NCBI RefSeq assembly: GCF_030028105.1
Contig: NC_092389.1
Span: forward strand, 13,999,180 to 14,063,179
Direction: 5' to 3'
DNA: 64,000 nucleotides
Source: Mobula birostris
Taxonomy: Eukaryota
Part shown: positions 1-28,510 of the stretch, piece after piece
How positions within the stretch are numbered: the first letter of the stretch is position 1
Layout: each line of letters begins with the position of its first letter
Notes under the pieces: model-generated
The model's database searches: none
The model's input: the letters and a program-made list of their open reading frames with translations, nothing else
Told to the model about the DNA's origin: nothing
Translations under genes and position numbers: made by a program

Positions 1-599
1 TAGATGTTCATTGCAGAGGGAGGATGTGAGTCACACAATAGTTTTCATTCAATCTATTATTACCTATCTGTTAAGTTTTGCTGGGTATCTGTTCCACAAG
101 CCCTGATGAGTTTACCCCTTTTATCATTTATTCTCATTCTTGTTTGTTTTTAAACTTGCTGAGGAACCTTCACTTTAATATTACAGCACAGTGGTTATGT
201 TCCTGGTAAAACCAATCTACAAAACCATGACGATTATTCTGAAATAATGAATTCAGCTCCTCGTGAAAAACACTTACATTAGAGTAGATAAATAATACAT
301 CTGGAATTCAAGATATCACTCTTGTTATAGCAAATTGACTGTGTTATTATAGAAGTCCATAATGTCCTTAAGGGAAGGAAATCTGTGTCCATAGTTGAGA
401 CTTCACTGGCATCTTAAACTGGTCAATTAACAAATAGAGCTGGACAATAATGTTGGTGGGGATCAGATTCTATAAAATAATTGTAAAGAACCTCTCGGAC
501 TGTTGCAGTGCTCCAGTCCTAAGGCATGCCTGGCCAGCTCCTTGCTCAATAGACGTTGCTGATCTATTCTTAGTACCCATTAAAACCCCAAATGCTCAC

Positions 600-1205
600 T
601 TGAGTTGCTGTCCGATTTCTGAGCTCTGGATCAGCTCGACACTATCCTGGGCTTCCTCAGTCATTTGGCTGATGTAATTCCAGAAGGCATCTCGAACCTG
701 ATCTCCATTGCTCTCAGCCCGACAGCCTATGGGAAGGAAAATTTGAGGTGATCAGGGTAGGAACACAGCAGGAACATTCCACAACATCTACTGTTCATTC
801 AACCAAATGATGCGTAACAAGACTTCACTCTGTATCTTGCTGATCACTCCTCTTTGGGGGTATACTGTAGCTGAATGAGTCATTGAGTAAAATCCCAGGT
901 CTTTGATTATTTGTAACGGGGACTTACAACAAACCCAGTAAGGGGAGGAACAAGTTGCACCCAGGAGCCGATGTGTGGAGGAATGGACAATGCAAGGGGC
1001 TCCAGAATTCAGATCAGAGCTAAAATCAGGTGCACATCAGTGAAGTGAAGCTAGTGCGTCCAAGGTCAATCAAGAACCAGCTTTGAAGACTGGAAATGGC
1101 AATAAAACCCAGTCATCGTCCCAGAATAAGAGAACAGGAATATTTGAATCTCATACCTGTGAGAAAGGCAGCAGCCAGAAGCAGGAGGATTGCTTTGGGA
1201 AACAT
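600..1205 (-). CDS. APOA4: Apolipoprotein A-IV-like gene copy A, partial (coding exons 1205-1157 and 726-600; last exon lies left of the window)
   Basis: Kozak CACCACCATG. The 49-nt signal exon reads MFPKAILLLLAAAFLTG|GTATGA. The 127-nt exon (AG|...AA|GTGAG) reads CRAESNGDQVRDAFWNYISQMTEEAQDSVELIQSSEIGQQLN, resembling APOA4 EVSADQVATVMWDYFSQL...QKSELTQQLN. Near-identical to copies B and C. A4 versus A5 orthology is not resolved. Confidence 0.85.
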
Positions 1206-2016
1206 GGTGGTGTTCTCAAATGATATTGAGTATGGCAGATTATTTCTGTATCCCTTTGCAGTCAATCTGTGAAAAGAAATAACGATCAGAGTTATTCCAG
1301 GGTTTAAACCCACATGGAAAATCTACCCGAGTATTACTGCCCCCTTCTGAACTCTATTTGTTATACATGGAGTCAGCATCCAGCCCTTTGAACCTGTTCA
1401 GTTATTGAGATCAAAGCTGATCTTTGAGCTCACCACCATTTTCCTGCACTGTATCAATATCACTAGGTGCCCAAGGCAACCAGAAATATATCCATATCTG
1501 CTTTGAATGAGCTCAGGGGCTGAGCCCTCCAGATTTCCAAAAACTGACTGACCTCTAATTTACAATATTCCTTCTTTTTGAAATCCTCAATGGCACACCC
1601 CTTACTCTGAAAATCTGACCCCACCCCAGGATCCTAAACTCTTCAGCTAGAGAAAGTATCCTCCATAAATCTAGCCTGTGACATGTCAATTATAAAACCA
1701 TAAATCACAGGAGCAGAATTGAGCCTTTTGGCCCATCGAATTTGCTCGTCCATTCAGTCAAAACTGATTTATTTTCTCTCTCAGCCCCATTCTCTTACAT
1801 TCTCCCCATAAACTTTGATGCCCTTACTAATGAAGAACCTATCAAATGCCCAGTGAATTATACCCTGTAACATTACAGAAACATAGAAAGCTGTTCTTCA
1901 GTTTCTATGCCTTGACCAATTGCCTGATCAGTGAAGCTGTCCATAGAGAGTAGTTAAAAGGATAAGCAGGCAAGCTCGCTGGGGTGGAGGAAAGTGAGCG
2001 TCAGGGCTCCTCTCAC

Positions 2017-2310
2017 CTGTTTCTGCTGTGTTCTTCCAGGAGATCTGTATGGCAGCCCACAGATGCTCTCTCTATATAAGGGCACCTTATCAGTGGCTGA
2101 TAACAAAGTTCACTCTATATAAGGGCACCTTATCAGCAGCTGATAACAAAGTTGGTACATTTGTGTTCTCGTGGACTTTCCCTGAAAACCAGGAGAATGT
2201 GGAGCTTCCAACAAGAATGTTACTCTGAACTGCTGCCTTCACCATGACTCCAACTCAACCTGAGAGGGCAAATTCCATTCAAGATTAATTTTTCATTCCA
2301 AAGGCCATGG
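2017..2310 (-). promoter_or_regulatory. Promoter and non-coding exon 1 of apo copy A (duplicated TATA/GATA module plus HNF4-type DR1 sites)
   Basis: Donor CAG|GTGAGA at 2017/2016. TTATATAG twice (43-bp tandem 2068-2110/2111-2153). Inverted GATA pair TTATCA..TGATAA. DR1-like TGGACTTTCCCT 2172-2183, AGGGCAAATTCCA 2265-2277 and TTCCAAAGGCCA 2296-2307. Confidence 0.7.
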
Positions 2311-4905: not shown

Positions 4906-4951
<46 letters not shown>

Positions 4952-6015
4952 TATAAAATGATATATACAGTTTGATGAAGTAATCCTGTTCGTTTAAATA
5001 ATTAATTACGGTTTCATGTAAAAATGCATTAATTGTAACTGTCATCACGCTATCACGTGATACAAGAGCGCCTCGCTTAAAGGCAAAGCGAGACCTATAT
5101 TTCGGACTCTGTATCTTCCTTTGAATTACTTCAAGTTTTGAAGTTAGAAAACATAACGGTGCTGATTAGGTATTTTAAAACGAACCCGAGACCTCTACCA
5201 ACCTGTTAAGCGTAGCGGGCCGTTCAAAATAAAGTAAACACAGCAGGTGCACCGTCGAGTGAAAACCCACCCCAACGTGAGGAGAGACGGCCGAATTTAA
5301 AGCGAATGCAGCCAGCACGTGCTTTTCGGAAGGGAACACACGATCGAGGTTTTTTTAAAATGGAGTAAACGGAAGAACTTGGGGATCATAAACTGTGAGT
5401 AGCGAGTGATACTACGCATTAAAAAATCAGAAATGGCTGGTTGCTTCGGAAAGATTGACGAGTTTGATTGCTCAAATGGCTCATGTACTGAACTATTGGG
5501 ACAGTATTTTGATGCAAATGAAATAGCCAATGAGAAGCGAGTGCCAGTTTTGCTAAATGTATTGAGTTTAAAGGCATACAGTTTTCTTCGACGTTTGACT
5601 GCTCCGACCAAACTATCAAGTCTGAGTTTTGCCGCTATTGTAAAAGTGATGCAGGAACACTGAGAACCCAGGCCATTGTTTATTGCAGAACACTTTAGGT
5701 TTCATAAGCAGAATCAAAAAGAAGGGGAGCCCATTTTGGCATGGGTGGCTGAATTGAAGAGACTGCCTTCCATAATGGGCTTAATGATGCACTGAGAGAT
5801 TGCTTAGTTTGTGAAATCTAAAAGAAAGTATTCATCAGCAGCTCCTAACTGAGGCGCAGCTTACGTTCCAATGAGCAGTGGAAATCACTGTTTCATTGGA
5901 AACCGCAGAAAAACAATTGAGTTGCAATCAGGAATGAAAGTGAGCATGAAGAATACTGAGATGCTGCAGTTGAAAACAGCCTGGCTGACCAAATTATGTT
6001 ATTGTGGCAGTGGAA
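4768..6015 (+). mobile_element. Ty3/Gypsy LTR retrotransposon remnant (LTR-like ~4768-5157 plus disrupted gag)
   Basis: MAGCFGKIDEFD..YFDANEIANEKRVPVLL..AYSFLRRLTAPTK..QEH*EPRPLFIAEHFRFHKQNQKEGEPI..VAELKRL is a typical Gypsy gag N-terminus, here with a stop and frameshifts. Contains a (TG)n(TA)n microsatellite. Confidence 0.75.
4890..4968. repeat. Compound (TG)n/(TA)n microsatellite (2 bp shorter in the copy at ~12615-12691)
   Basis: Directly visible. Explains the 7725 versus 7723 unit length. Confidence 0.9.
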
Positions 6016-6669
6016 TAGTTGAGAAGGAAAATAAATCAGCCATGATTGAATGCTGAAGCAGATTTGATGTGTCAAATGGCCTAATTCTGTTCCTATGTCT
6101 TACGGATCTTGCACTCCAGACATTGAAGTTAGCAGGTTCAGTGGCCTGCTGAAATGACCTGTTCAATAATACATACAGGATTGAAGTTATGTTAGAATCT
6201 TTGAAACACTGATTGAATTACTGATGTTAAGTATGGTCGAAAGACTTTATGAAGGCTGTCCAAGCTGCAGAAGGAGCAGATTTCCATCAAAGATATGGCA
6301 GAATAGGGCAGGTGTGATTTCAATAAGTATCTCCAAAAATTGCGTTGCACCAATGCTTGTCAGAGATATTTGCAGTAATTGGGGAAACGTGTGGGAAAAT
6401 GGGATGTAGTGGGTTGGATGAATTGCTTTGTTTTGTGCAGTATGATTTACATAGTTCTAGTGATAACTATTTTTGACCATGTAAAACTTCTCAGATATTA
6501 AAGTTTTATTGCAGGTATTTTATAGTTCACACTCCAAAATTTCAGTATTTGATTTTAATACTTTTCAGTCGAAAAACAATAAATAATTTTGACATATTAC
6601 CATTTGAGACAGCAAGAGGACCCCTGAGTCTTGACACACAGTTTGATAGAGCCACATTCTACATCTCAA

Positions 6670-8930
6670 TTAGTTCTGCAGATGCTGCCAGAAGTTGCCC
6701 CATAAAGTGGTGAGCTGGGTCTGAAGATCCTGCTGAACATTGCCTCCATTCAGGACAAGTCTCTCCTGCATCTCCTTCACATTCTGACTGATGATTTGTT
6801 TCAGCTGCTCAGTGTAGGGAGCCAGGTTCTGATGGAACTCCTCGATTCCCTGGTTAACATTGGTGTTGAAATTTTCAATGAATGGGCCCAGGTTCTGGTC
6901 CATGTTCTCGTTAAGTTTAGCCTTCAGTTCGACGATGTAAGGGTTCAGCCTTTGGTTCAGAACATCCACATGCTCATTGACTTTTGCCTGGAGCTTCTCG
7001 GCATATGGTTCAACTATCTGGGACATTTCTCCAATTTGTTGGTTCATCTTGATCTGGAGATCCTTGGCATAGGGGGCCAAGCTATTGCGAAGCTCCTGGA
7101 CATTCTCATTAAACCTGGAGCGGAATTCAGCAGCTTTGGCAGCCACATCCTGCCTGAGGGTGTCCATGTTTTCATCAATCTTCATCTGGAGCTCCTCAGC
7201 ATAGGGAGTCAGGACTTCCCTCAGGTTCTCTGTGCTCACTTCCAATCTGGCCTGTAGCTCTTCAGTAAAGGGAGTCAACTTCTGCCGAAGTTCCTCTGCA
7301 TTCTTATGCAGCTGTTGGCCCAGGTCTTCAGCAAAAGGGGTCAACTTCTGATGAAATTCTTCAATGTTCCTGCTGATCTTCCGATGAACTCCATCAGCAA
7401 AGGGAGCAAGTTTCTCCCTCAGGTCTTCCAGCTGTTCTCTTATCTGCTGGCGAAGGCTCTCAATGTCGACTGTCATCTTCTCATGAAGACCATCGGTGTA
7501 AGGAGCCAACTTCTGTCGGAGATCCTCAGCATAGTCATTGACAGTCTGCAGATTATCCTGAATAAGGCGACTGGAAAAGAAGAGACAGTTGTTTCTTATT
7601 CTCGTTACAGGAAAGAGATACATTTAGACAGAGCTACGTACAAGGCTGGTTCTGAAACAAATGTACACTGGAAAGGAGAGCTTCTAAAGGACATTTTGGA
7701 TCACAAAATCTTCTAAGGATAACTGTAGATGTTCATTGCAGAGGGAGGATGTGAGTCACACAATAGTTTTCATTCAATCTATTATTACCTATCTGTTAAG
7801 TTTTGCTGGGTATCTGTTCCACAAGCCCTGATGAGTTTACCCCTTTTATCATTTATTCTCATTCTTGTTTGTTTTTAAACTTGCTGAGGAACATTCACTT
7901 TAATATTACAGCACAGTGGTTATGTTCCTGGTAAAACCAATCTACAAAACCATGACGATTAATCTGAAATAATGAATTCAGCTCCTCGTGAAAAACACTT
8001 ACATTAGAGTAGATAAATAATACATCTGGAATTCAAGATATCACTTTTGTTATAGCAGATTGACTGTGTTATTATAGAAGTCCATAATGTCCTTAAGGGA
8101 AGGAAATCTGTGTCCATAGTTGAGACTTCACTGGCATCTTAAACTGGTCAATTAACAAATAGAGCTGGACAATAATGGTGGTGAGGATCAGATTCTATAA
8201 AATAATTGTAAAGAACCTCTCGGACTGTTGCAGTGCTCCAGTCCTAAGGCATGCCTGGCCAGCTCCTTGCTCAATAGACGTTGCTGATCTATTCTTAGTA
8301 CCCATTAAAACCCCAAATGCTCACTTGAGTTGCTGTCCGATTTCTGTGCTCTGGATCAGCTCGACACTATCCTGGGCTTCCTCAGTCATTTGGCTGATGT
8401 AATTCCAGAAGGCATCTCGAACCTGATCTCCATTGCTCTCAGCCCGACAGCCTATGGGAAGGAAAATTTGAGGTGATCAGGGTAGGAACACAGCAGAAAC
8501 ATTCCGCAACATCTACTGTTCATTCAACCAAATGATGCGTAACAAGACTTCACTCTGTATCTTGCTGATCACTCCTCTTTGGGGGTATACTGTAGCTGAA
8601 TGAGTCATTGAGTAAAATCCCAGGTCTTTGATTATTTGTAACGGGGACTTACAACAAACCCAGTAAGGGGAGGAACAAGTTGCACCCAGGAGCCGATGTG
8701 TGGAGGAATGGACAATGCAAGGGGCTCCAGAATTCAGATCAGAGCTAAAATCAGGTGCACATCAGTGAAGTGAAGCTAGTGCGTCCAAGGTCAATCAAGA
8801 ACCAGCTTTGAAGACTGGAAATGGCAATAAAACCCAGTCATCGTCCCAGAATAAGAGAACAGGAATATTTGAATCTCATACCTGTGAGAAAGGCAGCAGC
8901 CAGAAGCAGGAGGATTGCTTTGGGAAACAT
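6670..8930 (-). CDS. APOA4: Apolipoprotein A-IV-like gene copy B, complete: join(8930-8882, 8451-8325, 7570-6670), 358 aa
   Basis: 49+127+901 nt in frame with GT-AG introns of phase 1 and 2. The last exon is a run of Pro-punctuated 22-aa amphipathic repeats (PYTDGL.., PFADGV.., PFAEDL.., PFTEEL.., PYAEEL..). AATAAA at 6510-6505. Non-coding exon 1 donor at ~9742. Confidence 0.9.
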
Positions 8931-10949: not shown

Positions 10950-12007
10950 ACTGCAGTCTGTGCGGATTGGTAAAAACATATCCTCCTCGCTGACGATCAA
11001 CACTGGCGCACCTCGGGTGTGTGCTTAGCCCACTGCTCTATCTTTGTATACACATGACTGTGTGGCTAGGTATTAGCTCAAATACCATCTATAAATTTGC
11101 TGACGGTACAACCATTGTTGGTGGAATCTCAGGTGGCGACGAGAAGGCATACAGGAGTGAGATATGCCAACCAGTGGAGTGGTGTCACAGCAACAGCCTG
11201 GCACTCAACGTCAGTAAGACGAAAGAGCTGATTGTGGACTTCAGGAAGGGTAAGACGAAGGGACACATACCAATCCTCATTGAGGGATCAGAAGTGGAGA
11301 GAGTGAGCAGCTTCAAGTTCCTGGGTGTCATGATCTCTGAGAATCTAGCCTGATCCTTACATATTGATGTCATCATAAAGAAGGCAAGACAGTGGCTATA
11401 CTTCATTAGGAGTTTGAAGAGATTTGGCATGTCAACAAATGCACTCAAAAACTTCTATCGTTGTACCATGGACACCATTCTGACAGGCTGCATCACTGTC
11501 TGGTATGGAGGGGCTACCGCACAGGACCGATAGAAGCTGCAGAGGGTTGTAGATCTAGTCAGCTCCATCATTGGTACTAGCCTACAAAGTACCCAGGACA
11601 TCTTCAGGGAGCGGTGTCTCAGAAAGGCAGCGTCCATTATTAAAGACCTCCTGCACCCAGGGCATGCCCTTTTCTGACCGATACCATCAGGTAGGAGGTA
11701 CAGAAGCCTGAAGGCACACACTCAGGATTCAGGAACAGCTTCTTCCCCTCTGCCATCCTATTCTCAACTGAACTTTGAAGCTTTGGACACTACCTCACTT
11801 TTTTAATATACAGTATTTCTCTTTTTGCACATTTTTTAATAATCTATTCAATATACATAATTGTTTTACTTGTTTATTTATTATCATGTTTTTATTTAAT
11901 TTATTTTTTCCTCTCTCCCTGTGGATTATGCATTGCATTGAACTGCTGCTGCTAAGTTAACAAATTTCATGTCACATGCCAGTGATAATAAACCTGATTC
12001 TGATTCC
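10950..12007 (+). mobile_element. Rex1/Babar-type LINE, duplicate of 3225-4282
   Basis: Copy within the second tandem unit. Confidence 0.85.
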
Positions 12008-12492
12008 GGTGTTGGAATGCATGGCACCATTTGCGGGCTGCTGTAGATTGTGTTGGCTGTTAATGCAAACATTTGTTTTGAAGTACAAGTGATACATAGA
12101 TGGATCTGAATCTCACGGTGTCTAAGTTCAGGGTTGAACCCAGTTGGTGACACTGAGATGGATAGAAAAGGGGTTTGTTTTGTTGCTATTGTCTCTTCTA
12201 ATTTGCTGTCGTTGCTCCTTGTGTTATTTATTGGAACATATTGGGCCAGTGATGTTGGTGATGGAATGCGTGGAAACAATTGCAGGCTGCCTCAGCACAC
12301 CCTTGGGTTGTGTTGGGTGTTAACGCAAATAATGGAGGATGACCATGTGATAAATAAATCTGCATCTGTCTCTCTCGAAATGCCTTCTTTTCTGCTACAC
12401 TGGATTATATGCATCCAGAAACTCTGTTTGCACTTGCTCCAATTCCATTCACTCTCACTCTCTGACCTTTTAATTGCACCTAGAGACTTGAT

Positions 12493-12630
12493 TGTTTTGT
12501 ATTTAATATTTCAATTATACTTGAGTAATCTTGTGTGTGTGTGTATATATACATACAAAAATATATATATAGTTTGATTTAAGTATTTTGTTCGTTTAAA
12601 TAATTGTGTTGTTATATATGTGTGTATGTA

Positions 12631-12674
<44 letters not shown>

Positions 12675-13738
12675 TATAAAATGATATATACAGTTTGATG
12701 AAGTAATCCTGTTCGTTTAAATAATTAATTACGGTTTCATGTAAAAATGCATTAATTGTAACTGTCATCACGCTATCACGTGATACAAGAGCGCCTCGCT
12801 TAAAGGCAAAGCGAGACCTATATTTCGGACTCTGTATCTTCCTTTGAATTACTTCAAGTTTTGAAGTTAGAAAACATAACGGTGCTGATTAGGTATTTTA
12901 AAACGAACCCGAGACCTCTACCAACCTGTTAAGCGTAGCGGGCCGTTCAAAATAAAGTAAACACAGCAGGTGCACCGTCGAGTGAAAACCCACCCCAACG
13001 TGAGGAGAGACGGCCGAATTTAAAGCGAATGCAGCCAGCACGTGCTTTTCGGAAGGGAACACACGATCGAGGTTTTTTTAAAATGGAGTAAACGGAAGAA
13101 CTTGGGGATCATAAACTGTGAGTAGCGAGTGATACTACGCATTAAAAAATCAGAAATGGCTGGTTGCTTCGGAAAGATTGACGAGTTTGATTGCTCAAAT
13201 GGCTCATGTACTGAACTATTGGGACAGTATTTTGATGCAAATGAAATAGCCAATGAGAAGCGAGTGCCAGTTTTGCTAAATGTATTGAGTTTAAAGGCAT
13301 ACAGTTTTCTTCGACGTTTGACTGCTCCGACCAAACTATCAAGTCTGAGTTTTGCCGCTATTGTAAAAGTGATGCAGGAACACTGAGAACCCAGGCCATT
13401 GTTTATTGCAGAACACTTTAGGTTTCATAAGCAGAATCAAAAAGAAGGGGAGCCCATTTTGGCATGGGTGGCTGAATTGAAGAGACTGCCTTCCATAATG
13501 GGCTTAATGATGCACTGAGAGATTGCTTAGTTTGTGAAATCTAAAAGAAAGTATTCATCAGCAGCTCCTAACTGAGGCGCAGCTTACGTTCCAATGAGCA
13601 GTGGAAATCACTGTTTCATTGGAAACCGCAGAAAAACAATTGAGTTGCAATCAGGAATGAAAGTGAGCATGAAGAATACTGAGATGCTGCAGTTGAAAAC
13701 AGCCTGGCTGACCAAATTATGTTATTGTGGCAGTGGAA
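12493..13738 (+). mobile_element. Ty3/Gypsy remnant, duplicate of 4768-6015
   Basis: Copy within the second tandem unit. Confidence 0.75.
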
Positions 13739-16653: not shown

Positions 16654-17466
16654 GGTGGTGTTCTCAAATGATATTGAGTATGGCAGATTATTTCTATGTC
16701 CCTTTGCAGTCAATCTATGGAAAAAAAAATAACGATCAAAGTTATTCCAGAGTTTAAACCCAGATGGAAAATCTACCCGAGTATTATTGCCCCCTTCTGA
16801 ACTCTATTTGTTATACATGAAGTCAGCATCCAGCCCTTTGAACCTGTTCAGTTATTGAGATCAAAGCTGATCATTGAGCTCACCACCATTTTCCTGCACT
16901 GTATCAATATCACTAGGTTCCCATGGCAACCAGAAATATATCCGTATCTGCTTTGAATGAGCTCAGGGGCTGAGCCCTCCAGACTTCCAAAGTCCTGCTG
17001 ACCTCTAATTTACAATATTCCTTCTTTTTGATGTCCTTAATGGCACACCCCTTGATCTGAAACTCTGACCCCACCCCGGGATCCTAAACTCTTCAGCCAG
17101 AGAAAGTATCCTCTATACATCTAGCCTGTGACGTGTCAGTAATAAAACCATAAATCACAGGAGCAGAATTGAGCCTTTTGTCCCATCGAATTTGCTCGTC
17201 CATTCAGTCAAAACTGATTTATTTTCTCTCTCAGCCCCGTTCTCTTACATTCTCCCCATAAACTTTGATCCCATACTAATGAAGAACCTATCAAACTCCC
17301 AGTTAATTATACCCTGTAACATTACAGAAACATAGAAAGCTGTTCTTTAGTTTCTATGCATTGACCAATTGCCTGATCAGTGAAGCTGTCCATAGACAGT
17401 AGTTAAAAGGATAAGCAGGCAAGCTCGCTGCGGTGGAGGAAAGTGAGCATCAGGGCTCCTCTCACC

Positions 17467-17720
17467 TGTTTCTGCTGTGTTCTTCCAGGAGATCTGTGTG
17501 CAGCCCACAGATGCTCACTCTATATAAGGGCACCTTATCAGCAGCTGATAACAAAGTTGGTACATTTGTGTTCGACTCGTGGACTTTCCCTGAAAACCAG
17601 GAGAATGTGGAGCTTCCAACAAGAATGTTACTCTGAACTGCTGCCTTCACCATGACTCCAACTCAACCTGAGAGGGCAAATTCCATTCAAGATTAATTTT
17701 TCATTCCAAAGGCCATGGTT
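17467..17720 (-). promoter_or_regulatory. Promoter and non-coding exon 1 of apo copy C (single TATA/GATA module)
   Basis: One copy of CACTCTATATAAGGGCACCTTATCAGCAGCTGATAACAAAGTT followed by the same DR1-like sites. Confidence 0.7.
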
Positions 17721-20129
17721 TGTTACCTCTGTAACATTAGATCACTCTATGGACTTGGGGTGAGGTATTTTTAATGACAGGGAGAGTCTGTCATCATTGG
17801 CAGCAGGTTAGGTAACCTGAGACATTGATTCGAGGTCATCAGCAAAGGAAACAGATGGGAGATGTAGGAATAATGAGTTGCTGGCATCTGGAATGAATCT
17901 TGTGGAGTGGATGGAAAGAGTCTCCCCTTGCCTCCGCAGATAGATCGAGAGGAAGCAAGTTGTAAGCCATGTGGAAAGTGTGATAATTTGAATTAATTCC
18001 TTAGACAGAAATGCTGGGCCTAACAAGGTCCTGTCTGAGATAAAAGAATCTATGATTTTGTTACGTTTTACCTGCTAAGGCCTTAAAATTTCCCCATGTG
18101 AACATATTCACACAAGACGATCACTGTTGCTTAAGCCTGCGACCTCATGGTCACAGAGTCACACAGCACAGAAACAGGCCTTTGGCCAATGGAGTCCTTG
18201 ACAAACAACAGTCTACATTAACACTATATTAACTGCATTTTTAAATTCTTCCCACATTCCATTCAAATCTCCCCATATTCTAACCATCTATCGGCAATTT
18301 ACAATGTCCAATAACCTACCAACCTGTCTGACTTTGAGGTGTGTGAGGAAAAGGAGCATTTGAAGAAAACCCACTTTGCTTCATGTACAACGTGCAAACT
18401 GCACACAGAGCCCTGAGTCCACTGCGAATCCAATGGGGAAAACAAAGCCCAGTGTCTGTGAATCTACAAGTTCACTGGACGCTGGAGGCCCAGAGGCCTG
18501 TCCTGGGGTTGGGCAACGGTTTGTTTGTGTGTGTGGGAGGGAGGAACAGGGATTGTTTTGCTGTAGTTGTTTAGTTGCTTGTGTGTTTTGTCTTGCTCTG
18601 CCGAGCGTTGTGGGCATGTTGTGTTGGTGTTGGAATGCATAGCGACACTTGCAGGCTGCCGTAGATTGTGTTGGCTGTTAACAGAAATGTCTGTTTTGAT
18701 CTACACATGATATATAGATGGATCTGAAGCTGACAGTGCCCAAGGTCAGGGTTGAACCCAGATGGGGACACTGTGGGACAGTAGCTCCACTCAATGCAGA
18801 GTTGACCTGTTAATACTGTGTCAAGTGGCTGATGCCTTTTGTGAGTCATTGGCAAGGCTGCAAAAAGTATGGGACGTGACGCTAAATGAGTTTGGGGAAA
18901 CTGAAAGTGTGGCACTGCGTCCAGACATCAAATTACATGAACAGGTTGTTCAGGTAAATGATACTTGAGGAAAATGGTAGACTGGAGTATGGCTGGATAT
19001 ATTGGAAGGTTAAATTGTGACAAGACGCAGGATTGTTTAATGCATACTTGAAGCAAATGGAGATTTTTTCCCCCTGCGGTAATGATATTATAGTGCAGCG
19101 GAAAGAGGAGAAAATGAGCAGAACAGGGCGATTTACTCAAGAAAGAAAACTAGTATGTAGAAATTAATTTGAACAGTGGTATTTCATTTATTGGTAGGTA
19201 TTTGATCTACTCACTGAGGCAGTTACGATATTAGGCACTCACTTTAATCCAGTGCCTTCAGAAACTGTCTAAAGCTATAAATCTGGTAACTAAAACTAAG
19301 AGCCAATCGAAGGAAGGAATTGGAGAAATCATCACTGAATGGAATAACCTGCAAATTGCTAATTGTGGAATCCTCTGAGATTTAGCAGTTATCTGTACAC
19401 TTACACTTGATCTCACTGAGGCTCACACTGAATATCATGTGTAAAATTAGCATTTCTGTGAAAAAACTATCAAAAACCACGAGGGAATTTTGTTCTTTGC
19501 TAGATGCAGATATGAATGTATGTACTGCATGTAAACAAACTGACTGGGCAAAGTAAGTATCTTTTTCAGTGGGACTTGGTCATGTGAAAGTCAGGAAGCC
19601 ACAGTACTGTTGTCAAGGCAACCATTCAGATCAAATACACATTCAAGTCAGCTTATTGCTTGAACTGAACAAAGTGGGACAAATGGTACAAGTCTGCAAG
19701 TTGATAAACTGATAAAGTGCCACATCAAATATTACTGTGAAAATAAAATTTACTGGCAGAAGAGGTAATGTTTCATATAGAAAACAGGATAGTTAACAGA
19801 AAAAGCCAAGAGTTCGCATAAATGGTACTTTTCTGGTCAGAAGGATGAAATGGCTTGTGTGTCTCAGTGTGTCTTAAAACGAGTACAACTGGCCTGGATA
19901 AAGTTACGGTGTTAAATTTGTCAGTGACACAACTGGTGTGAAAGCAAGTTGTGAAGAGGATGTAAGAGGTGACAAAATGTATGGTGGAAATTGTGGTATC
20001 GTCCTTTTTAGTAGGAAAAATAAAAGCTATGCAGTACACGATGTACTTGGTGGGTTTTGGTGATACAGAAGGATCTTGGTGTCCTAGAGCATGGATCAGA
20101 AAAGATGAAAATAAAGCTACAGCCAATAA

Positions 20130-20480
20130 ATAAGAACATAGAAATCTACAGCACATTACAGGCCCTTCAGCCCATAATGTTGTGCCGACCACGTAACCTA
20201 CTCTAGAAACTGCCTAGGATTACCATAGCCCGCTATTTCTCTCAGCTCCATGTACCTAAGAGTGTCTTGAAACACCCTATTGTATCCGCCTCCACCACCG
20301 TCGCTGACAGAGTGCATTCCACACACCTACCACTCTGTGTGGAAAAACTTGCCCCTGACATTCCCTCTGTACCTACTTCCAAGCACCTTAAAACTATGCC
20401 CCTCGTGCTAGTCATTTCAGCCCTGAGGAAAATCCTCTGGCTATCCACACGATCAATGCCTCTTATCATCTTATACACCT
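20130..20480 (-). mobile_element. CR1 LINE 3' fragment
   Basis: YKMIRGIDRVDSQRIF..TRG; 3' tail TTTCTATGTTCT. Same family as 36190-36825. Confidence 0.8.
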
Positions 20481-20864
20481 GAGAAAGCTCATAAAATGGA
20501 GCATTATTTATTGTCAGAGGGGTTACATTCCCTAGTGGGCAGATTATTCTTCAGTTACATGGGGTATGAGTGAGACCACATCTGGAATGGTGTGCATAGT
20601 TCAATTAAACAAGGACAGGAGCTGCTCAGTGGAGACAATATCTGAAATGGGTGGGTTGTTTCATGAGGAAAGACTGAACCGGTTATCTTTTGTGTGTGCA
20701 CTTTAGAAAACTGAGAGGTGGCCTGATTGAAACATATAAGGGATCTTGACAGGATAAATGGGAGAGGATATTTTTGCCTTATGGGATATCTGGAACTGGA
20801 ATTAGTGTTAGAATAAGGGTTTTGTCTTAGCGGATTTTGAATCTTTAGAGTTCTCTTCTTCAAA

Positions 20865-22855
20865 TAGTGGTTGCTGCCACTTGCCCCTGGTTTGCTGTGG
20901 GCCACTGTGGGTTGTGCTGCACTAACGCGGGCCGCTGTGAGATCGATGGTGGCTGTTGCTGCCCCCAACGCGTCTGCATCCTGGAGCTTCCCTGGCGGAG
21001 ACTGTGGTTTCTGCACGGAGGTAGAGAGTTGCCCCTGGCACATCCACACATGCCCTCCCCCCCCAGTGGGACAGCAGGTCCAGCCAATTATGCAGGACTC
21101 CTAGAAGTCAGCTGGCCACACCTCATGCTTCACTGTGTTTTTCCCCACTGCGATGCGCAGCCACCTCTTTCTTCACATCGCCGCACAGTCACCTGTGACC
21201 GTAGCCAGCTGGACCGCCATCATTGTACACGCAGGCAGGATTGGCTGGTCCCTGCTGGGGAGGACTCCGGGGCAGATGATGGTGCTGGTCGACTCCGTGC
21301 CTACTGATGCACGGCATCTGATGCCCTCCACCATGCAGTCTACGTACAAGCCATGCTCTTCACCCAAATGGCCCACCCGGAGAGGCAACAATGGAAGGAT
21401 TCTGCTGGAAGTCTCAAGTATTGCCACCCACTTGGCATTTCCCATTGGCTGCACTGGGCTGCGGTATGGCGCTGGTGCTGGGCAATTCCTGGCCACGTGG
21501 CCTGCCTTGCCACATTGGTAGCAGAGATCGTTCCGTGGCCTATGGCAGGGTCTGCACAGCGCTGGTTATACCTGTCTCACTGGCTCCTGCTTGCCTGTTT
21601 CCTCCTCTGCCTTGGTGACAGAAGCCTGGGCTCGTGGTGTGCGGGGTGATGCTGGAACACTTTGGGGGCTAAAATTGGTTTAGCCCTCTCTGCCTTTGCT
21701 GGTGCTTTGCTTCTGAATGCACTTGGGTATCAGCACCTTTAGAAAGGTGTGAAGGGCAAACTCTTTCTGGGTTGCAGGAGGGAACTGGGGGTAGCCATGC
21801 CAAGCACAGTGGTGGAGATCTGCTGCAAGTGCCCCCAGGCTTTCTCTCACATGGTTCTGCCTGCTGCCCAGTTCTTCCCTCAATGCTTCCTCCAATGGCC
21901 TCAGCTCGAAACACCATCTCAGCACCATGATAAGGGCCCTGTAGTTACGCTGCTCAGCCGATATTAGGTCGAGGAGGGCCCGCAGGGCATCCCCTCCAGC
22001 GCCAGGGCAAGGTGTACTGTCGTCTTGGTGGGGCTCCATCTGCTGTGCCATGTCGTAAGTTTCACTTGTGCCATGTAAGGCTCCAAGTGGCTGGTACCAT
22101 TGTATCTGGGAGCTTCATGATGGACCTTGTGGTGTGAACTCCTGAGGCCATGTGGTTGTCCTCTTGTTCCAGGGGCATCAGTGGTGCCTGCCATATTGCC
22201 CGTCCTTCCATGGCTGTAACGTCTTGGGTTCTGCATGGGCTGAGAGTGAGGCAGGTGATATGCTCCACTGTGTGCCCCAGAGTTTGGAGCCTGGGTACGC
22301 TCGCCCCATCGGGGATCCTTGGAAAAGCACCATGCTCGGTTCCCAAGTCCTCCCTCCGGATCTGCGTCCCGTCTTCGAGAGCCTGGCCTGAGGGTGCGGG
22401 GGAGGCATACTACTCGGTCCTTCGACTTATTCCCCAGATTTTAAGGCGTTCTATTTGACGTTGTAGTTCTTCAATCTCGCCGTCAATTTCTAATCCCACT
22501 CCTGACACCAGCGAGGTGAGCGTTCGGTCCATGATGACAGATGAGAAATGCTCAACTGCCAGTTTTATTGCGACAAGCAGAAAAACTGACCAGGCACTAT
22601 GGCCCGGGGAGAGAAGCCACTCAATCACACACAGACAGGGGAGGTGATTATTACAAACCCTGGTTACTGTCAGGGTGACTCACAAACGCACATTAGAATA
22701 ACCCGAGCTGAAAGGTAACAATAAATTAACTTGAACATCCCACTATAATCCCACGAAAGCATTTTAAACAAGTACAATAAATAGTGCTGGCTGCTAGGAG
22801 TTCTGGCCAGGACCACATGCCCCCCCGCCCCACCCACCACGACCAGAGCGCGACA
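20865..22855 (-). mobile_element. Ty3/Gypsy LTR element remnant: 5' LTR (~22855-22511), tRNA-Leu PBS, degenerate gag and protease
   Basis: GC-rich island. PBS TGGTGTCAGGAGTGGGATT at 22510-22492. Gag-like PRYNGTSHLEPYMAQVKL..W...VHLALALEG / ALRALLDL..EQRNYRAL. Protease-like LYVDCMVEGIRCRASVGTESTSTII (decayed ALVDTGS). Confidence 0.75.
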
Positions 22856-24624
22856 ATATATTTAACAGAACACTATGAGTACTAATGATAACACTCCACC
22901 ACCGTCCCACAGAAAGGACGTAAACATATGAAGCAATCACAGAGGTGTAGTCTGCTCAATACTGAAATGAGTGACTAAGAAATAGTAACCTTCCCAAATC
23001 TAAGAAACTTTGGAAAATTAAAACGATTGTATCAATTCTCACTTGCCACTTCTTTCAAGACTCTTGACAGAACCAGATCATTTCAGCTTTGAGGAGAGAA
23101 GCTTGGGTTGTTTTCTTTGGGAATTGACTGAGGGGTGTAAAATTATGAGGATCTACAGTAAAGAGGTAGGACCGATTTTTTTTTTTTCTTTTTTTTTCTT
23201 CAAAGAGCAACAAAAGCCAAGTGGCATAGAGGGGAGATGAGAAATGGTTTTCACCTCGAAGGTGTTAAGTGTCTCGAACTCGCTGTCCAAAAGGGTAACA
23301 GAAGGAGAAACCCTCTTTATATTGAAAAACTACTTGATTTACACTGGCGAGTGTTATGGACCTTCTCTCTTGGATTAGGCTGCTTCACAATGGTTTGGCT
23401 ACAACAGAACGGCCTGGGGGAATTAACAGGATACTATTGCCTGATTCTGTCCTTAGCTTTGGCACAAGTGAGTTGAGACGTCAAACTGTGATCACATTTA
23501 TGACTGCAGAAATCCCAATCTGACCTTCTAAGTCTTAAATTAACCGTCACTATGGGCTTGTGCCCTTTCTACCTTCAACTCATGTGGCTGAGTCATTACT
23601 AGTGTCATGGACTTGGCTCTGGGTAACTTGCCTGAAGAATTATTCTGTTCTCTGGTGCTCAAAGCTGAACATCACTTAAAATCGATGATGTATTTAGGGC
23701 GGGAACCCATGACTCTGATATAGCAGTAGATATGGAAAATTCCACTGACGTGGAAGTAGAAGCTCCAGGGTCAAACCCGGCAAAGTACCGAGGGAAAAAC
23801 CAAAGTTATAAGCCTGAAGGTAGAAGTAGGGGCTCAAAATAGTCATGGGAGTCCGTAGGAATCATGAAGACATGGGTCACCAGGGTGAGAAATCTGTGCA
23901 AGTCTGTAAGTTGAGATTTGAAGGTCAAACCCATGATCAGTGTCCTGTGAAGTCTGAAGTTGGAGGCCCGATGCCTGTGAGTCTGAGAATCCAGAGACAA
24001 GGCCTGGTGGCCCAAGGGTGAACTACTCTGGGTTTGGAGGCCTGTCAGGGTGTGTGAATGGGTGAGATGGATAGAAAAGGGGTTTGTTTTGTTGCTATTG
24101 TCTCTTCTAATTTGCTGTCGTTGCTCCTTGTGTTATTTATTGGAACGTTGTGTGCCACTGGTGTTAGTGATGAATTGTGTGGAAACACTTGGTGGGCTGC
24201 CCCAGCACACCCTTGGGTTGTGTTCGTTGTTAACACAAATGTGATAAATAAATCTGAATCTGTATCTGTCTCTCTTGAAATGACTTCTTTTCTGCTCCAC
24301 TGGATTATCTGCATCCTTAAACTCTCTGTTTGTACTTGCTCCAATTCCATCGATTCTCACTCTCTGATCTTTTAATTGCACCTAGACACCTTATTCCTTG
24401 CGCTGAGCATAAACTCGTTCCCACTGTCCAGTCCCTGATCGTAGTTATCTTCAGGCTTTCAACAAGCTTGTAATAAGCAGCTGGCATGAATGGGTAAGTG
24501 TTAATCAGAGATCCACAGTCACCTGCACAGAACATATGGTCATAATATCAGGTACCCAAACATGGTTCTGGTGTGGTGTGGGACAGTGTGTATACAGATA
24601 TGGTGTGTATGTATGGGTTTGGGC

Positions 24625-25148
24625 CCTGTATTTAGAAAAGGATGTGCTGGCAGTTGGAGAGGGTCCTGAGGAGGTTCACAAGAATGATCCTGGGAATGAA
24701 AGTGCTAACTTATGAGGAGCGTTTGATGGCTTTGGACCTGTACTCACTGGAGTTCAGAAGATTGCGGGGGAATCTGATTGAAATCTAACAAATATTGCAA
24801 GACTTAAAGGGAGTGCTTCTGAAGTGGATGTTTCCAATTGTCGAAGACTCTAGAACCAAAGGGCACAGACTCAGAATAGAAGGACATCCCTTTAGAACAG
24901 AGATGAGGAGGAATATCTTCAGCCATAGGGTGGTTAATCTGTGGAATTCATTACCACATGCAGGTATGGAGGCCAAGTAATTGGGAATATTTAAAGTGGA
25001 GGTAGGTCAATTCTTTATTAGTAGCTGTGTCAAAGGTTTCAGGGAGAAGGCAGGAGAATCAGGTGAGAAGGAAAATAAATCGGCCATGATTGAATGCTGA
25101 AGCAGATTTGATGTGCCAAATGGCCTAATTCTGTTCCTATGTCTTACG
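24625..25148 (+). mobile_element. CR1 LINE 3' fragment
   Basis: [43 protein letters not shown], followed by a CR1 3' UTR. Confidence 0.85.
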
Positions 25149-25733
25149 GATCTTGCACTCCAGACATTGAAGTTAGCAGGTTCAGTGGCCTGCTGAAATG
25201 ACCTGTTCAATAATACATACAGGATTGAAGTTATGTTAGAATCTTTGAAACACTGATTGAATTACTGATGTTAAGTATGGTCGAAAGACTTTATGAAGGC
25301 TGTCCAAGCTGCAGAAGGAGCAGATTTCCATCAAAGATATGGCAGAATAGGGCAGGTGTGATTTCAATAAGTATCCCCAAAAATTGCATTGTACCAATGC
25401 TTGTCAGAAATACTTGCAGTAATTGGGGAAACGTGTGGGAAAATGGGATGTAGTGGGTTGGATGAATTAGATGAATTGCTTTGTTTTGTGCAGTATGATT
25501 TACATAGTTCTAGTGATAACTATTTTCGACCATTAGTAAAGCAAGGAAAACTTCTCAGATATTAAAGCTTTATTGCAGGTATTTTATAGTTCACGCTCCA
25601 AAATTTCAGTAATTGATTTTAATACTTTTCAGTCGAAAAACAATAAATACTTTCAGCATATTACCATTTGAGACAGCAAGAGGACCCCTGAGTCTTGACA
25701 CACAGTTTGACAGAGCCACATTCTACATCTCAA

Positions 25734-27888
25734 TTAGTTCTGCAGATGCTGCCAGAAGTTGCCCCATAAGGTGGTGAGCTGTGTCTGAAGATCCTGCTGA
25801 ACATTACCTCCATTCAGGACAAGTCTGTCCTGCATCTCCTTCACATTCTGACTGATGATTTCTTTCAGCTGCTCAGTGTAGGGAGCCAGGTTCTGATGGA
25901 ACTCCTCGATTCCCTGGTTAACGTTGGTGTTGAAATTTTCAATGAATGGGCCCAGGTTCTGGTCCATGTTCTCGTCAAGTTTAGCCTTCAGTTCGACGAT
26001 GTAAGGGTTCAGCCTTTGGTTCAGAACATCCACATGCTCATTGACTTTTGCCTGGAGCTTCTCGGCATATGGTTCAACCATCTGGGACATTTCTCCAATT
26101 TGTTGGTTCATCTTGATCTGGACATCCCTGGCATAGGGGGCCAAGCTATTACGAAGCTCCTGGACATTCTCATTAAACCTGGATCGGAATTCTTCAGCTT
26201 TGGCAGCCACATTCTGCCTGAGGGTGTCTATGTTTTCATCAATCTTCATCTGGAGCTCCTCAGCATAGGGAGTCAGGACTTCCCTCAGGTTCTCTGTGCT
26301 CACTTCCAATCTGGCCTGTAGCTCTTCAGTAAAGGGAGTCAACTTCTGCCGAAGGTCCGCTGCATTCTTACGCAGCTGTTGGCCCAGGTCTTCAGCAAAA
26401 GGGGTCAACTTCTGATGAAATTCTTCAATGTTCCTGCTGATCTTCCGATGAACTCCATCAGCAAAGGGAGCAAGTTTCTTCCTCAGGTCTTCCAGCTGTT
26501 CTCTTATCTGCTGGCGAAGGCTCTCAATGTCTACTGTCATCTTCTCATGAAGACCATCGGTGTAAGGAGCCAACTTCTGTCGGAGATCCTCAGCATAGTC
26601 ATTGACGGCCTGCAGATTATCCTGAATAAGGTGACTGGAAAAGAAGAGATAGTTGTTTCTTATTCTCGTTACAGGAAAGAGATACATTTAGACAGAGCAC
26701 CTTGCAAGTCCAATTGTCAAACATACTATGCAGAAGATTGGATGGTTTACAATAAGAAAGACATTGGGATCAGAATACCTTTTGGAATTAATTGCACATG
26801 TTCTTTAGTAACACAGGACAGGATGCAACTACTGCCATGTACAGACATGGGAAACGTTGGCCTAAATAGATCTGTGTTGAGGAAGTGGCAGATATCAGAT
26901 ACAGCATTGGTATGGTTGAAGGCTTGTATCTGATATCTGCTACTTCCTGCATGCAGATCTATTTAGATCTACATTTTCCATGGCTGTATTTAACTGTAGC
27001 TGCATCTGGCTTCACATAAAGCTGTTCCTATGCCTGAAGGTATACCTGCTTATACACATAGCTATATGCATTGATCTGATTTCATTACACGAATAAACAT
27101 TACTTTGCTGAGATACTTTCAGCATGTGCCAGAAGCAACATCTGTTATTTCAAACACCAGCCTCATTGCTGTTTGATCTCAAACTGGCAGAGAAAGCCCT
27201 ATTTTAGCCTTTCGGTCAATATTTTCATGTACTGCTATGTCCAGGTGTGTCCCAGCTAGCACAACTTCTGTAACTATTCCTAATATTGCTGACACTCACT
27301 TGACTTGTTGGCTGATTTCTGAGCCTTCATTTAGGTCATTGTTGGTCAATTGGCTGATGTAATCCCAGAATGCATCTCGAATCTGCTCTCTATTGAGTTC
27401 AGCTTGGGAACCTGTATGAAAGAAAAGGAAAGCAGCATTTCACAGTGGCAACACAGGAACAAGTTCAATATACCTAGTATTCATTTAGCAGGCAATCAGT
27501 TTGTAAGGCGCATGCAACTTCACCATAACACACTCCGTATTGAAGGGATAATCAGGTACTCCTCTCAGGAGATGAGGTTAGATGATTTTAGAGTAAAATA
27601 ATTTGTCTTTTGGGGCATGGTTTAAAATCTTTCCAGACTGAGTGTCGAATCAAGTCTTTCCCCAAAGAGGAACCAAATTGTAGAACCAATGGTTGCTAAG
27701 CTCAGACCTTGACCTTAAAACTGGGCTCAACAGTTGTGTGCACATCTGGTGTCCAAGGTGCACAAGCTCAAGAGAAACACTAAATACCTAACAGTATAAA
27801 AAATATTTAAAACAAAGGATGAAATATAGAATCTCATACCTGTCATGAAAATAGCAGCAGCTAATACAAGGATCGTCCCTTGATTCAT
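25734..27888 (-). CDS. APOA4: Apolipoprotein A-IV/A-V-like gene D, complete: join(27888-27840, 27411-27300, 26634-25734), 353 aa
   Basis: Signal exon MNQGTILVLAAAIFMTG|GTATGA. 112-nt exon SQAELNREQIRDAFWDYISQLTNNDLNEGSEISQQVN. 901-nt last exon ~97% identical to B/C. Exon-2 acceptor at 27936, exon-1 donor at 28265, AATAAA at 25574-25569. The symbol is tentative and could be APOA5-related. Confidence 0.85.
26822..27006. repeat. Long imperfect inverted repeat (82-bp arms, 21-nt loop) in intron 3 of gene D
   Basis: 26822-26903 versus the reverse complement of 26925-27006: 65/82 matches by hand count, no indels. Confidence 0.85.
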
Positions 27889-28264
27889 GATGGATTTCAC
27901 ATACTAAGTAGAATTCCTGCTCTCTTTTCAAAAAATCTGTGAAAAAAAATGAAAAGATTTAGATCAATATTCAACACCTATTCCTTCATCAAGTTATTCA
28001 TTTTTAAGTGGAACATTTTCTCACTGATAAATGAGAACCCTGACTTGTATAAATGGCATTCCGTGTATTCTTATCTCCCATTGCATACTGTAGCAGACAA
28101 TTGTACCCTGCCACACAATTGAAAACAGAAAGCTGAATTCTTGACACAGTACATTTGACTTTATGCAAAGACATTTGCTGTACAGATGCACAGCTAAGTG
28201 TGCATACACTGTGCCCCTTAATTAGACCCCATCACACAGATGGTGTATCCAGGGCTTCTCTCAC

Positions 28265-28510
28265 CTTCCTCTTCTCTTGAAGCTGTGTCTCAGACCACAG
28301 ACCTGCCTGTTTTTAAAGGTACTTTATCAGCAGTTGATGACCAGTTAGTCTGCTTCAGTTGGTGGACTTTCCCTGCCACCCAAAACAAAGTGGAGCTTCC
28401 AACCACACTGTCACTCTGAACTGTGATGTGTTTCCTTCAATATGTCTCCATCTCAACTGACAGGGGCAAACTCCAATCAAATGGCATGTCTCCGTACAAA
28501 GGCCGTACTT
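28265..28510 (-). promoter_or_regulatory. Promoter and non-coding exon 1 of apo gene D
   Basis: Donor AAG|GTGAGA at 28265/28264. TATA-like TTTAAAAA at ~28317-28310. TTATCAGCAGTTGATGA, TGGACTTTCCCT 28363-28374 and GGGGCAAACTCCA 28463-28475 occur in the same order as in promoters A-C. Confidence 0.65.

What the first reader, a model, noticed from the sequence alone, without database searches (positions are those of the whole stretch)
1..28510. Exon-shuffled apolipoprotein array: tandem genes look like chimeras of two old paralogs
Seen: gene D and genes B/C share a ~97%-identical last exon, 3' UTR and 3' flank (25064-26698 vs 6020-7634, plus 24063-24395 vs 4429-4768). Similarity stops abruptly 64 nt into intron 3 (..GACAGAGC at 26698/7634/15357). 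Their signal exons, exon 3 (112 vs 127 nt), introns and promoters are deeply diverged. Each tandem unit reads as D's last exon, then a modified D-to-C spacer, then C-type 5' exons. Inference: an unequal crossover between intron 3 of two ancient paralogs fused one paralog's promoter, signal peptide and N-terminus to D's lipid-binding repeat exon, and that unit was then amplified. The result would be one amphipathic body expressed with two different N-termini from two promoter types.
Basis: partly seen in the sequence, partly recalled or inferred. Interest (0 to 1): 0.85.

Follow-up and report, generated by a model that had tools for sequence, protein, structure and literature searches.

The report
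Ray apolipoprotein genes sharing one body
In a ray genome, neighbouring apolipoprotein A-IV-like genes carry two old, different front halves joined to one nearly identical lipid-binding last exon, an old recombination product kept alike by gene conversion: a clear but ordinary case of how tandem gene families evolve.

Summary
Four minus-strand, four-exon apoA-I/A-IV/E-family genes (A, B, C, D) lie in a 7.7-kb tandem array. D and B/C share a 1.65-kb block: the last 64 nt of intron 3, exon 4, the 3' UTR and about 0.5 kb of flank. It differs by 2.85%, while promoter, exon 2 and exon 3 are only 58-69% alike.

- The right edge lies at equivalent positions of two anciently homologous introns, so it marks a homologous exchange.
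- The left edge is a non-homologous break inside a LINE. That LINE is continuous on the D side and truncated on the B/C side, which mildly favours D's context as the source.
- Contigs of four other organisms (about 1-7% diverged) cross the C-type junction, so the fusion is old. The ~97% identity therefore reflects later gene conversion, not the age of the event.
- Conversion also shows as a 0.5% / 5% / 8% / 16% mosaic among the units.
- RNA contigs of a sister species splice both exon-3 types onto exon 4.

Which gene is the chimera is not settled. The sequence left of the window, and D's junction in outgroups, could not be examined. This is a new member of a known kind (Lepore/anti-Lepore-like hybrids with concerted evolution) and of modest interest. 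Other notes of this scan had already flagged this array (s1-896700, s1-896323).

The parts
25734..26634 (-). Gene D exon 4 coding part (299 full codons, one split codon, stop TAA); apolipoprotein A1/A4/E repeats
   Evidence: Open frame; Pfam PF01442 E 2.7e-71; prolines spaced 33, 22, 22, 22, 44, 22, 22, 19, 22; AG acceptor
27300..27411 (-). Gene D exon 3, 112 nt: the short variant, 5 residues fewer than the family norm
   Evidence: Its 3' end plus the D-type first exon-4 letters appear as a loose end on exon 4 in RNA contigs of run X9 (checked)
27840..27936 (-). Gene D exon 2, 97 nt: 5' UTR plus a 49-nt coding start (signal peptide)
28265..28430 (-). Gene D exon 1. The 3' end is exact; the 5' end is approximate, placed by homology to gene C exon 1
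   Evidence: GT donor at 28263-28264; 28545-28250 aligns to 17756-17451 at 69%; not tested by RNA
25049..26698 (-). Shared block, D copy: last 64 nt of intron 3, exon 4, 3' UTR (AATAAA at 25574), 3' flank and LINE tail
13729..15357 (-). Shared block, gene C copy
   Evidence: The junction 15357|15358 is bridged by contigs in X9, X12, X13 and X14
6006..7634 (-). Shared block, gene B copy
   Evidence: one substitution against the C copy
16048..16174 (-). Gene C exon 3, 127 nt: the canonical family length
   Evidence: RNA joint 15290 to 16048 with three letters between (table 5c)
16605..16714 (-). Gene C exon 2, 110 nt
   Evidence: RNA joint 16714 to 17466; loose end at 16183 equals exon 2 letters
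17466..17638 (-). Gene C exon 1, extent taken from an RNA contig of a sister species
   Evidence: X9 record 31 and an adapter-like loose end at 17638
8325..8451 (-). Gene B exon 3 (one residue differs from A and C). Gene B exon 2 is 8882-8991 and its exon 1 3' end is 9742
600..726 (-). Gene A exon 3 (identical to C). Gene A exon 2 is 1157-1266 and its exon 1 3' end is 2017. Its exon 4 lies left of the window
26699..26820 (-). D intron 3 just beyond the junction: weak in-register homology to C-type intron 3 (15358-15475)
   Evidence: z 5.8, 0 of 500 shuffles reach the score
24598..25150 (.). LINE 3' fragment, continuous across the left edge of the block in the D unit
   Evidence: aligns to 61806-61268, 47436-47903, 58554-58255 and 17314-17148 across 25049
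13729..13829 (.). Last ~100 nt of the same LINE insertion in the B/C units (also 6006-6106), cut at 13728|13729
   Evidence: very high word depth at 13628-13818 in DNA runs
10950..12007 (.). 1058-bp LINE fragment inserted in units 1 and 2 only (also 3225-4282), with GGTG on both sides
   Evidence: matches 45992-46935; RT hit below the Pfam cut-off, E 5e-4
12008..12493 (.). Spacer element orthologous to 18626-18773 plus 24063-24395 at only 83-85% (also 4283-4768): the old layer of unit divergence
18774..24062 (.). 5289-bp insertion private to unit 3, with a gag-like zinc-knuckle frame at 21176-21565 (minus) and no LTRs found
12494..13728 (.). Segment X of units 1 and 2 (also 4769-6005), not homologous to segment Y of unit 3 (24396-25048)
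   Evidence: X-type flank is also present in X9 and X12 contigs

Best explanation
A, B, C and D are colinear four-exon apoA-IV-like paralogs in one tandem array next to ZPR1. Two old gene types exist, the C-type (A, B, C) and D. They differ by 31-42% in promoter, signal-peptide exon and exon 3. Long ago, before this ray split from at least four related organisms, a homologous exchange with one end in intron 3 put the same exon-4 block behind both kinds of 5' half. The block comprises 64 nt of intron, the whole repeat body, the 3' UTR and about 0.5 kb of flank. Its source was most likely D's context, because only there is the downstream LINE undisturbed. Since then the block has been a 1.65-kb island of homology between D and the C-type genes. 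Gene conversion has repeatedly re-homogenised it up to its edges, as it has the C-type 5' regions among themselves. Units 1 and 2 are a very recent further duplication. Both gene types are transcribed and spliced as predicted. They give secreted proteins with one lipid-binding body (15 of 299 residues differ) and two different N-terminal segments of 36 and 41 residues. Shown: the anatomy, the age of the C-type junction, the mosaic and the splicing. Inferred: the direction, the conversion mechanism and any functional difference.
For: Anatomy and identities. The right edge is in register in homologous introns. The left edge is non-homologous, with the LINE continuous only in D. The C-type junction is bridged in 4 of 4 runs laid: X9 record 28 with 9 other letters in 813, X12 record 7 with 113 in 1941, X13 record 11 with 13 in 231, and X14 record 23 with 234 in 3267. 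D and C differ by only 2.85%, which is less than the A-to-organism-E orthologous difference (about 7%) across the same gene. The X-type flank is already present in organisms B and C. The units are a mosaic: 6 differences in 1200 nt, 42 in 800, 4 in 350, 16 in 200, 8 in 630, then 83-85% identity. A copy at 44302-44352 spans 18629, so unit 3 is the undisturbed state. X12 has an exon-4 contig (14694-15266) at depth 20.3 against 11.5-12.8 on either side, which hints at a separate identical tract in organism C. RNA evidence: the intron-1 joint, the C-type exon 3 to exon 4 joint, a D-type exon 3 loose end on exon 4, and D-specific letters at 4 of 4 sites checked.
Against: The direction rests on one structural argument. 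LINE continuity is also compatible with unit 3 being an old array unit and D the chimera. The protein outgroups are at most 41% identical, and the body tree gives no fine orthology. D-to-C differences are almost evenly spread, and their level (2.85%) is close to the mean for the C-type 5' block (76 of 3176). A single event at that date would also give this pattern if the outgroup bridging had another cause. Contig depths are weak copy-number evidence, and the tool warns that a hole proves nothing. The RNA evidence comes from a sister species and from assembled contigs, so it cannot link one exon-4 variant to one 5' half.
Confidence: 0.55

Rival explanations
1. Lepore-type deletion: the C-type genes natively own this exon 4. 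An in-register unequal crossover between intron 3 of the last C-type unit and intron 3 of an ancient paralog deleted that unit's 5' exons and the paralog's own exon 4. D is then the hybrid.
For: The in-register edge fits equally well. C-type 5' exons already join this exon-4 lineage in all four other organisms. X14 shows one contig at even depth over the whole C-type gene and no second exon-4 copy at 85% likeness or more. C-type exon 3 has the canonical family length, while D's is the odd one. The D-to-C difference (2.85%) is close to the mean for the C-type 5' block, which would date one event without extra conversion.
Against: It needs a pre-existing array, a deletion and a separate replacement of Y by X. 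The X-type flank is older than the split from organism C while the block is only 2.85% diverged, so conversion is needed anyway. D-type exon 3 is already spliced to a D-variant exon 4 in organism B.
Confidence: 0.27
2. One reading: one fairly recent unequal crossover in intron 3 created the hybrid unit. Its ~97% identity dates the event, and the unit was then simply amplified.
For: Unit anatomy and colinearity; evenly spread differences in the block; the recent unit 1 / unit 2 duplication.
Against: The junction is shared with organisms 6-7% diverged. There is a 0.5-16% mosaic among units. There is a second, non-homologous breakpoint at the block's left edge.
Confidence: 0.06
3. Assembly artefact: the shared block or the tandem units were produced by mis-joining near-identical repeats.
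For: Units 1 and 2 are 99.82% alike, a pattern that assemblers can create.
Against: Independent contigs of four other organisms cross the C-type junction. RNA contigs show both splice forms and both exon-4 variants. D and B/C copies differ at 47 defined sites.
Confidence: 0.03

Closest known systems
Haemoglobin Lepore / anti-Lepore and similar hybrid genes made by unequal crossover between tandem paralogs, such as red-green opsin hybrids (recalled textbook knowledge, not from a call)
   Same: Tandem paralogs in the same orientation. The switch lies at an equivalent position of both genes. The products carry one gene's 5' half and the other's 3' half, and copy number changes.
   Different: Here the switch lies in an intron between paralogs only about 60% alike there, and the arrangement is old and fixed across species. 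The block has a second, non-homologous edge, and its identity is maintained by later conversion. Neither parental configuration could be shown.
Concerted evolution by interlocus gene conversion limited to part of a gene (recalled general knowledge)
   Same: Paralogs within a genome are more alike (2.85%) than orthologs across species (3.3-7%). The tract ends where homology ends. Tandem units show mosaic divergence.
   Different: Only one tract edge lies in homologous sequence. The island of homology itself had to be created first by a rearrangement.
Vertebrate APOA1/C3/A4/A5 cluster and teleost apoA-IV tandem paralogs (PMC6854765 and PMC4348566, passages read)
   Same: Exchangeable apolipoprotein fold with 22-residue proline-punctuated repeats in the last exon, tandem family members, and ZPR1 next door (the human neighbourhood is recalled).
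   Different: The ray genes keep the four-exon structure with an intron in the 5' UTR, whereas human APOA4 is described with three exons. The ray body is sister to all other shark and sawfish bodies sampled. The passages I read describe no hybrid or partly converted members.

Membership tests
Exchangeable apolipoprotein A1/A4/E family (Pfam PF01442) | Domain match above the curated cut-off | tested here: met
   239.7 and 242.4 bits against a cut-off of 90
Exchangeable apolipoprotein A1/A4/E family (Pfam PF01442) | Proline-punctuated repeats of 22 (or 11) residues in the last exon | tested here: met
   Proline spacings 33, 22, 22, 22, 44, 22, 22, 19, 22 in both D and C
Exchangeable apolipoprotein A1/A4/E family (Pfam PF01442) | Gene plan: signal-peptide exon, short exon, then a long last exon, in conserved intron phase | tested here: met
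   RNA joints
Strict APOA4 orthologue | Groups with tetrapod APOA4 to the exclusion of APOA5 and other members | tested here: not met
   The ray body sits in a chondrichthyan clade (97*) outside the group that holds tetrapod A4, A5 and sturgeon A4-like. 'apoA-IV-like' is the safe name
   In-register residual homology beyond the junction, 0 of 500 shuffles
   Colinear from the C-type upstream region to 24395, and again in the block. Between them X (1235-1237 bp) and Y (653 bp) are not homologous
Only a note title is available (s1-896323)
Interlocus gene conversion / concerted evolution | Paralogs more alike than orthologs although the arrangement predates the species split | tested here: met
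   D to C 2.85% against 3.3-7% to organisms C and E, which share the junction
Interlocus gene conversion / concerted evolution | Mosaic of tracts with different divergence among copies | tested here: met
   0.5%, 5%, 1%, 8%, 1% and 16% along unit 3 against unit 2
Interlocus gene conversion / concerted evolution | Both tract ends lie within older homologous sequence | tested here: not met
   Right end yes; left end no

The most novel reading that the evidence does not exclude
The partial homogenisation is not a by-product but is maintained. Conversion bounded by intron 3 lets the lipid-binding body co-evolve across the array, while two N-terminal and promoter modules stay distinct. The ray would then deploy one body in two regulatory or lipid-affinity contexts, and different ray lineages would re-homogenise the block independently. 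The identical tract hinted in organism C, and the lack of a close second copy in organism E, would be snapshots of that cycle.
Probability: 0.15. Interest if true: 0.55.

Novelty: new member of a known kind. Interest (0 to 1): 0.35.

Why it matters
It gives a well-resolved natural example of intron-bounded partial concerted evolution in the oldest vertebrate apolipoprotein cluster. Both edges are mapped to the base, one of them to an internal clock in the form of a cut LINE, and the arrangement has a minimum age from related species. For apolipoprotein biology it suggests a natural experiment: the same 22-mer repeat body with two N-terminal segments, a region thought to tune lipid binding in apoA-IV (recalled, not tested here). 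It does not open a new kind of mechanism.

Tried and rejected
Protein outgroups. The word-indexed search found one hit at E <= 1e-10 among 873 candidates. The exhaustive search found 275 proteins at E <= 0.001, the best only 36-41% identical. Named hits are sharks, a sawfish, a numbfish and tetrapods. A 47-row body tree (quick method, SH-aLRT only) places D and C together as sister to all other chondrichthyan bodies, so it cannot say which 5' half owns exon 4. For that tree I used 47 rows: the two window exons plus hits taken from P0001-P0045, P0061, P0077 and P0151. Those hits had to be 200-700 residues long with at least 150 aligned residues. All other hits were left out.

Exon-3 peptides against the 154 stored proteins. 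The C-type is canonical, with its best match a sawshark protein at 60% over 38 residues. The D-type needs a gap. I judged these peptides too short for a tree and built none.

APOA5 orthology of D's 5' half was considered and dropped. D exon 3 scores higher with A4 proteins (30.4 bits) than with A5 proteins (23.5 bits).

LTRs or inverted repeats for the 5.3-kb insertion: none found.

The idea that the 477-bp element represents two independent TE insertions, which would make the array a plain whole-gene duplication ending at 18629, was rejected. A third family copy spans 18629, and the 1058-bp piece is one LINE copy.

Uneven spread of differences in the block: only one 259-nt identical run (P 0.013). 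That is not enough to claim several tracts.

Literature. Five searches found no paper on hybrid or converting apolipoprotein genes in rays. I read passages of PMC6854765 and PMC4348566 only. All other papers were seen as search listings. Supplementary files were not requested.

Earlier notes gave titles only.

Full report
WHAT IS THERE. The window has no N. Its first 28.7 kb holds a tandem array with a 7.72-kb unit: 1-7725, 7726-15448, and a third, interrupted unit from 15449 to 26698. Four genes lie on the minus strand. Each has four exons with GT..AG introns.
- Gene D: exon 1 3' end at 28265, exon 2 27840-27936, exon 3 27300-27411, exon 4 from 26634.
- Gene C: exon 1 17466-17638, exon 2 16605-16714, exon 3 16048-16174, exon 4 from 15293.
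- Gene B: exon 3 8325-8451, exon 2 8882-8991, exon 4 from 7570.
- Gene A: exon 3 600-726, exon 2 1157-1266, with its exon 4 left of the window.

Exon 4 is an apolipoprotein A1/A4/E domain (PF01442, E 2.7e-71). Its prolines are spaced mostly 22 residues apart. ZPR1 exons lie at 47.9-49.4 kb on the plus strand. From recall, ZPR1 is the neighbour of the APOA5/A4/C3/A1 cluster in human. Earlier notes of this scan call the genome a ray; I did not determine the species.

D and B/C share 25049-26698 against 6006-7634 and 13729-15357 at 96.1% including gaps. That is 47 events in 1650 columns, or 2.85%: 1 in the 64 intron letters, 23 in 898 coding letters, and 23 in the 688 columns downstream of the stop codon (3' UTR, 3' flank and LINE tail). 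For exon 4, dN is 0.022 and dS 0.042, and 285 of 300 residues are identical. Both copies end with the same eight letters at 26698 and 15357 and then differ. The 5' halves are homologous but old: exon 1 plus proximal promoter 69% over 314 nt, exon 2 58%, exon 3 67% (112 against 127 nt). Both exon-2 types have 49 coding nt, so both join exon 4 in the same phase.

THE TWO EDGES DIFFER.

Right edge. The first 120 nt beyond the junction still align in register, offsets 6-108 against 6-103. The score is 41 against 19.9 +/- 3.7 for dinucleotide shuffles, and 0 of 500 shuffles reach it. A control against unrelated sequence gave z 0.9. C-type and D are therefore colinear ancient paralogs, and the junction is a switch from about 98% to about 60% identity at equivalent positions. 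That is the mark of a homologous exchange.

Left edge. In the D unit the edge lies inside one continuous LINE 3' fragment (24598-25150), which other copies in the window align across. B and C keep only the last ~100 nt of the same insertion, joined to unrelated sequence. No residual homology follows (z at most 2). The D-side flank is thus the undisturbed state, and the B/C side carries a second, non-homologous breakpoint.

THE SPACER. Units 1 and 2 equal unit 3 plus a clean 1058-bp LINE insertion at 3224|3225. Unit 3 has its own clean 5289-bp insertion at 18773|18774. A third family copy at 44302-44352 spans 18629, which shows that unit 3 is undisturbed there. With these insertions removed, the units are colinear up to 4768/12493 against 24395. 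Then come X (4769-6005) and Y (24396-25048), which are not homologous, and then the block.

A MOSAIC, NOT ONE COPYING EVENT. Unit 3 against unit 2 shows the following:
- 15449-16648 (intron 3, exon 3, intron 2): 6 differences in 1200 nt.
- The next stretch (intron 1): 42 in 800.
- Exon 1 and promoter: 4 in 350, plus a 43-nt segment present only in units 1 and 2.
- The next stretch: 16 in 200.
- Up to the LINE insertion: 8 in 630.

Directly beyond that insertion the orthologous 477-bp element is only 83-85% alike, with scattered substitutions. Units 1 and 2 differ by 12 mismatches and one gap in 7725 nt. Such patchwork is what repeated conversion among old units produces.

AGE, FROM OTHER ORGANISMS. 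I laid contigs of four coded runs on 12100-17800. The runs were X9 (RNA by guess, organism B), X12 (organism C), X13 (organism D) and X14 (organism E). In 4 of 4 runs a record bridges 15357|15358 with at least 31 letters on each side:
- X9 record 28: 15265-16077, 9 other letters.
- X12 record 7: 15237-17189, 113 other letters in 1941.
- X13 record 11: 15314-15544, 13 other letters.
- X14 record 23: 13988-17269, one 3267-nt contig covering the whole C-type gene, 234 other letters.

C-type 5' exons were therefore already joined to this exon-4 lineage before these organisms split, at about 6-7% divergence for C and E. The X-type flank is also present in X9 (record 25) and X12 (records 1-4). Yet D and C in this genome differ by only 2.85%. 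Later homogenisation of the block is therefore needed in every scenario.

Two weaker hints point the same way. In X12 the exon-4 contig 14694-15266 has depth 20.3 against 11.5-12.8 for its neighbours. It also breaks where D and C differ at codon 9, as if two copies were identical there. In X14 the summed depth over exon 4 equals that of the single contig, so no second copy at 85% likeness or more was laid. The tool warns that contig depth and holes are weak evidence.

EXPRESSION. X9 carries spliced forms, so it does contain RNA.
- A joint 16714 to 17466 (intron 1; CT..AC on the plus strand, depth 3198).
- A joint 15290 to 16048 with three letters between (table 5c). This is C-type exon 3 joined to exon 4.
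- A loose end at 16183 that equals exon 2.
- A loose end at 15290, from two contigs. After the D-type first three exon-4 letters, it equals the plus strand at 27300-27326, the 3' end of D exon 3.

The second letters seen in X9 at 14309, 15018, 15191 and 15291 are the D-specific letters at 4 of 4 sites checked. Both N-terminal types and both exon-4 variants are thus expressed in a sister species. Contigs cannot link a variant to a 5' half, nor rank expression levels.

OUTGROUP PROTEINS DID NOT HELP. The best relatives are 36-41% identical. D and C group together as sister to all other chondrichthyan bodies. C-type exon 3 has the canonical family length, with a best match of 60% to a sawshark apoA-IV-like protein.

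READING. I favour, at 0.55, an old homologous exchange ending in intron 3 that placed a D-context exon-4 block behind C-type 5' exons. Recurrent conversion confined to that island of homology followed, along with a recent duplication of units 1 and 2. The mirror image, a Lepore-type deletion that makes D the hybrid, keeps 0.27. It explains the outgroup data at least as simply but needs more rearrangements. A single recent crossover (0.06) and an assembly artefact (0.03) are poorly supported.

NOVELTY. Hybrid genes by unequal crossover and partial concerted evolution are textbook processes. My five literature searches found no such case described for apolipoproteins of rays. [quoted passage not shown] I rate it a new member of a known kind, interest 0.35.

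Noticed in passing
window 47851-48126 and 49096-49428 (+): Exons of a ZPR1 zinc-finger gene (Pfam Zn_ribbon_ZPR1 E 4e-13; jr-ZPR1 E 5e-11). This suggests conserved linkage of ZPR1 with the apolipoprotein cluster. The gene appears to face D head to head, an orientation that (from recall) differs from human.
   Followed up: partly
window 2067-2109 and 9792-9834: A 43-nt segment in the exon 1 / proximal promoter region is present in genes A and B but absent from gene C (17514|17515). It overlaps a TATA-like motif that lies inside the exon 1 defined by the RNA contig.
   Followed up: no
window 17466-17638: Exon 1 of the C-type gene, as seen in a sister species' RNA contig, is 173 nt long and ends at an adapter-like loose end. 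The transcription start therefore lies about 110 nt upstream of the TATA-like motif I first took for the promoter.
   Followed up: partly
window 18774-24062: A 5.3-kb GC-rich insertion private to unit 3 has a gag-like CCHC zinc-knuckle frame (21176-21565, minus) but no LTRs or inverted repeats. It is probably a degraded or nested retroelement.
   Followed up: partly
window 13628-13818 (also 5905-6095): The LINE tail and neighbouring repeat reach word depths up to about 256,000 in the DNA runs of three related organisms. It is among the most abundant repeats of these genomes.
   Followed up: no
window 1-15448: Units 1 and 2 are 99.82% identical, whereas the C-type gene lies at single-contig depth in organisms C and E. 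The latest amplification may be private to this lineage or polymorphic.
   Followed up: partly
window 8325-8451: Gene B exon 3 differs from A and C by one residue (S to T), although unit 2 is otherwise closest to unit 1. In 15449-16248 (units 1 and 2: 1-800 and 7726-8525) the three copies are about equally distant from one another, a sign of very recent exchange involving gene C.
   Followed up: no
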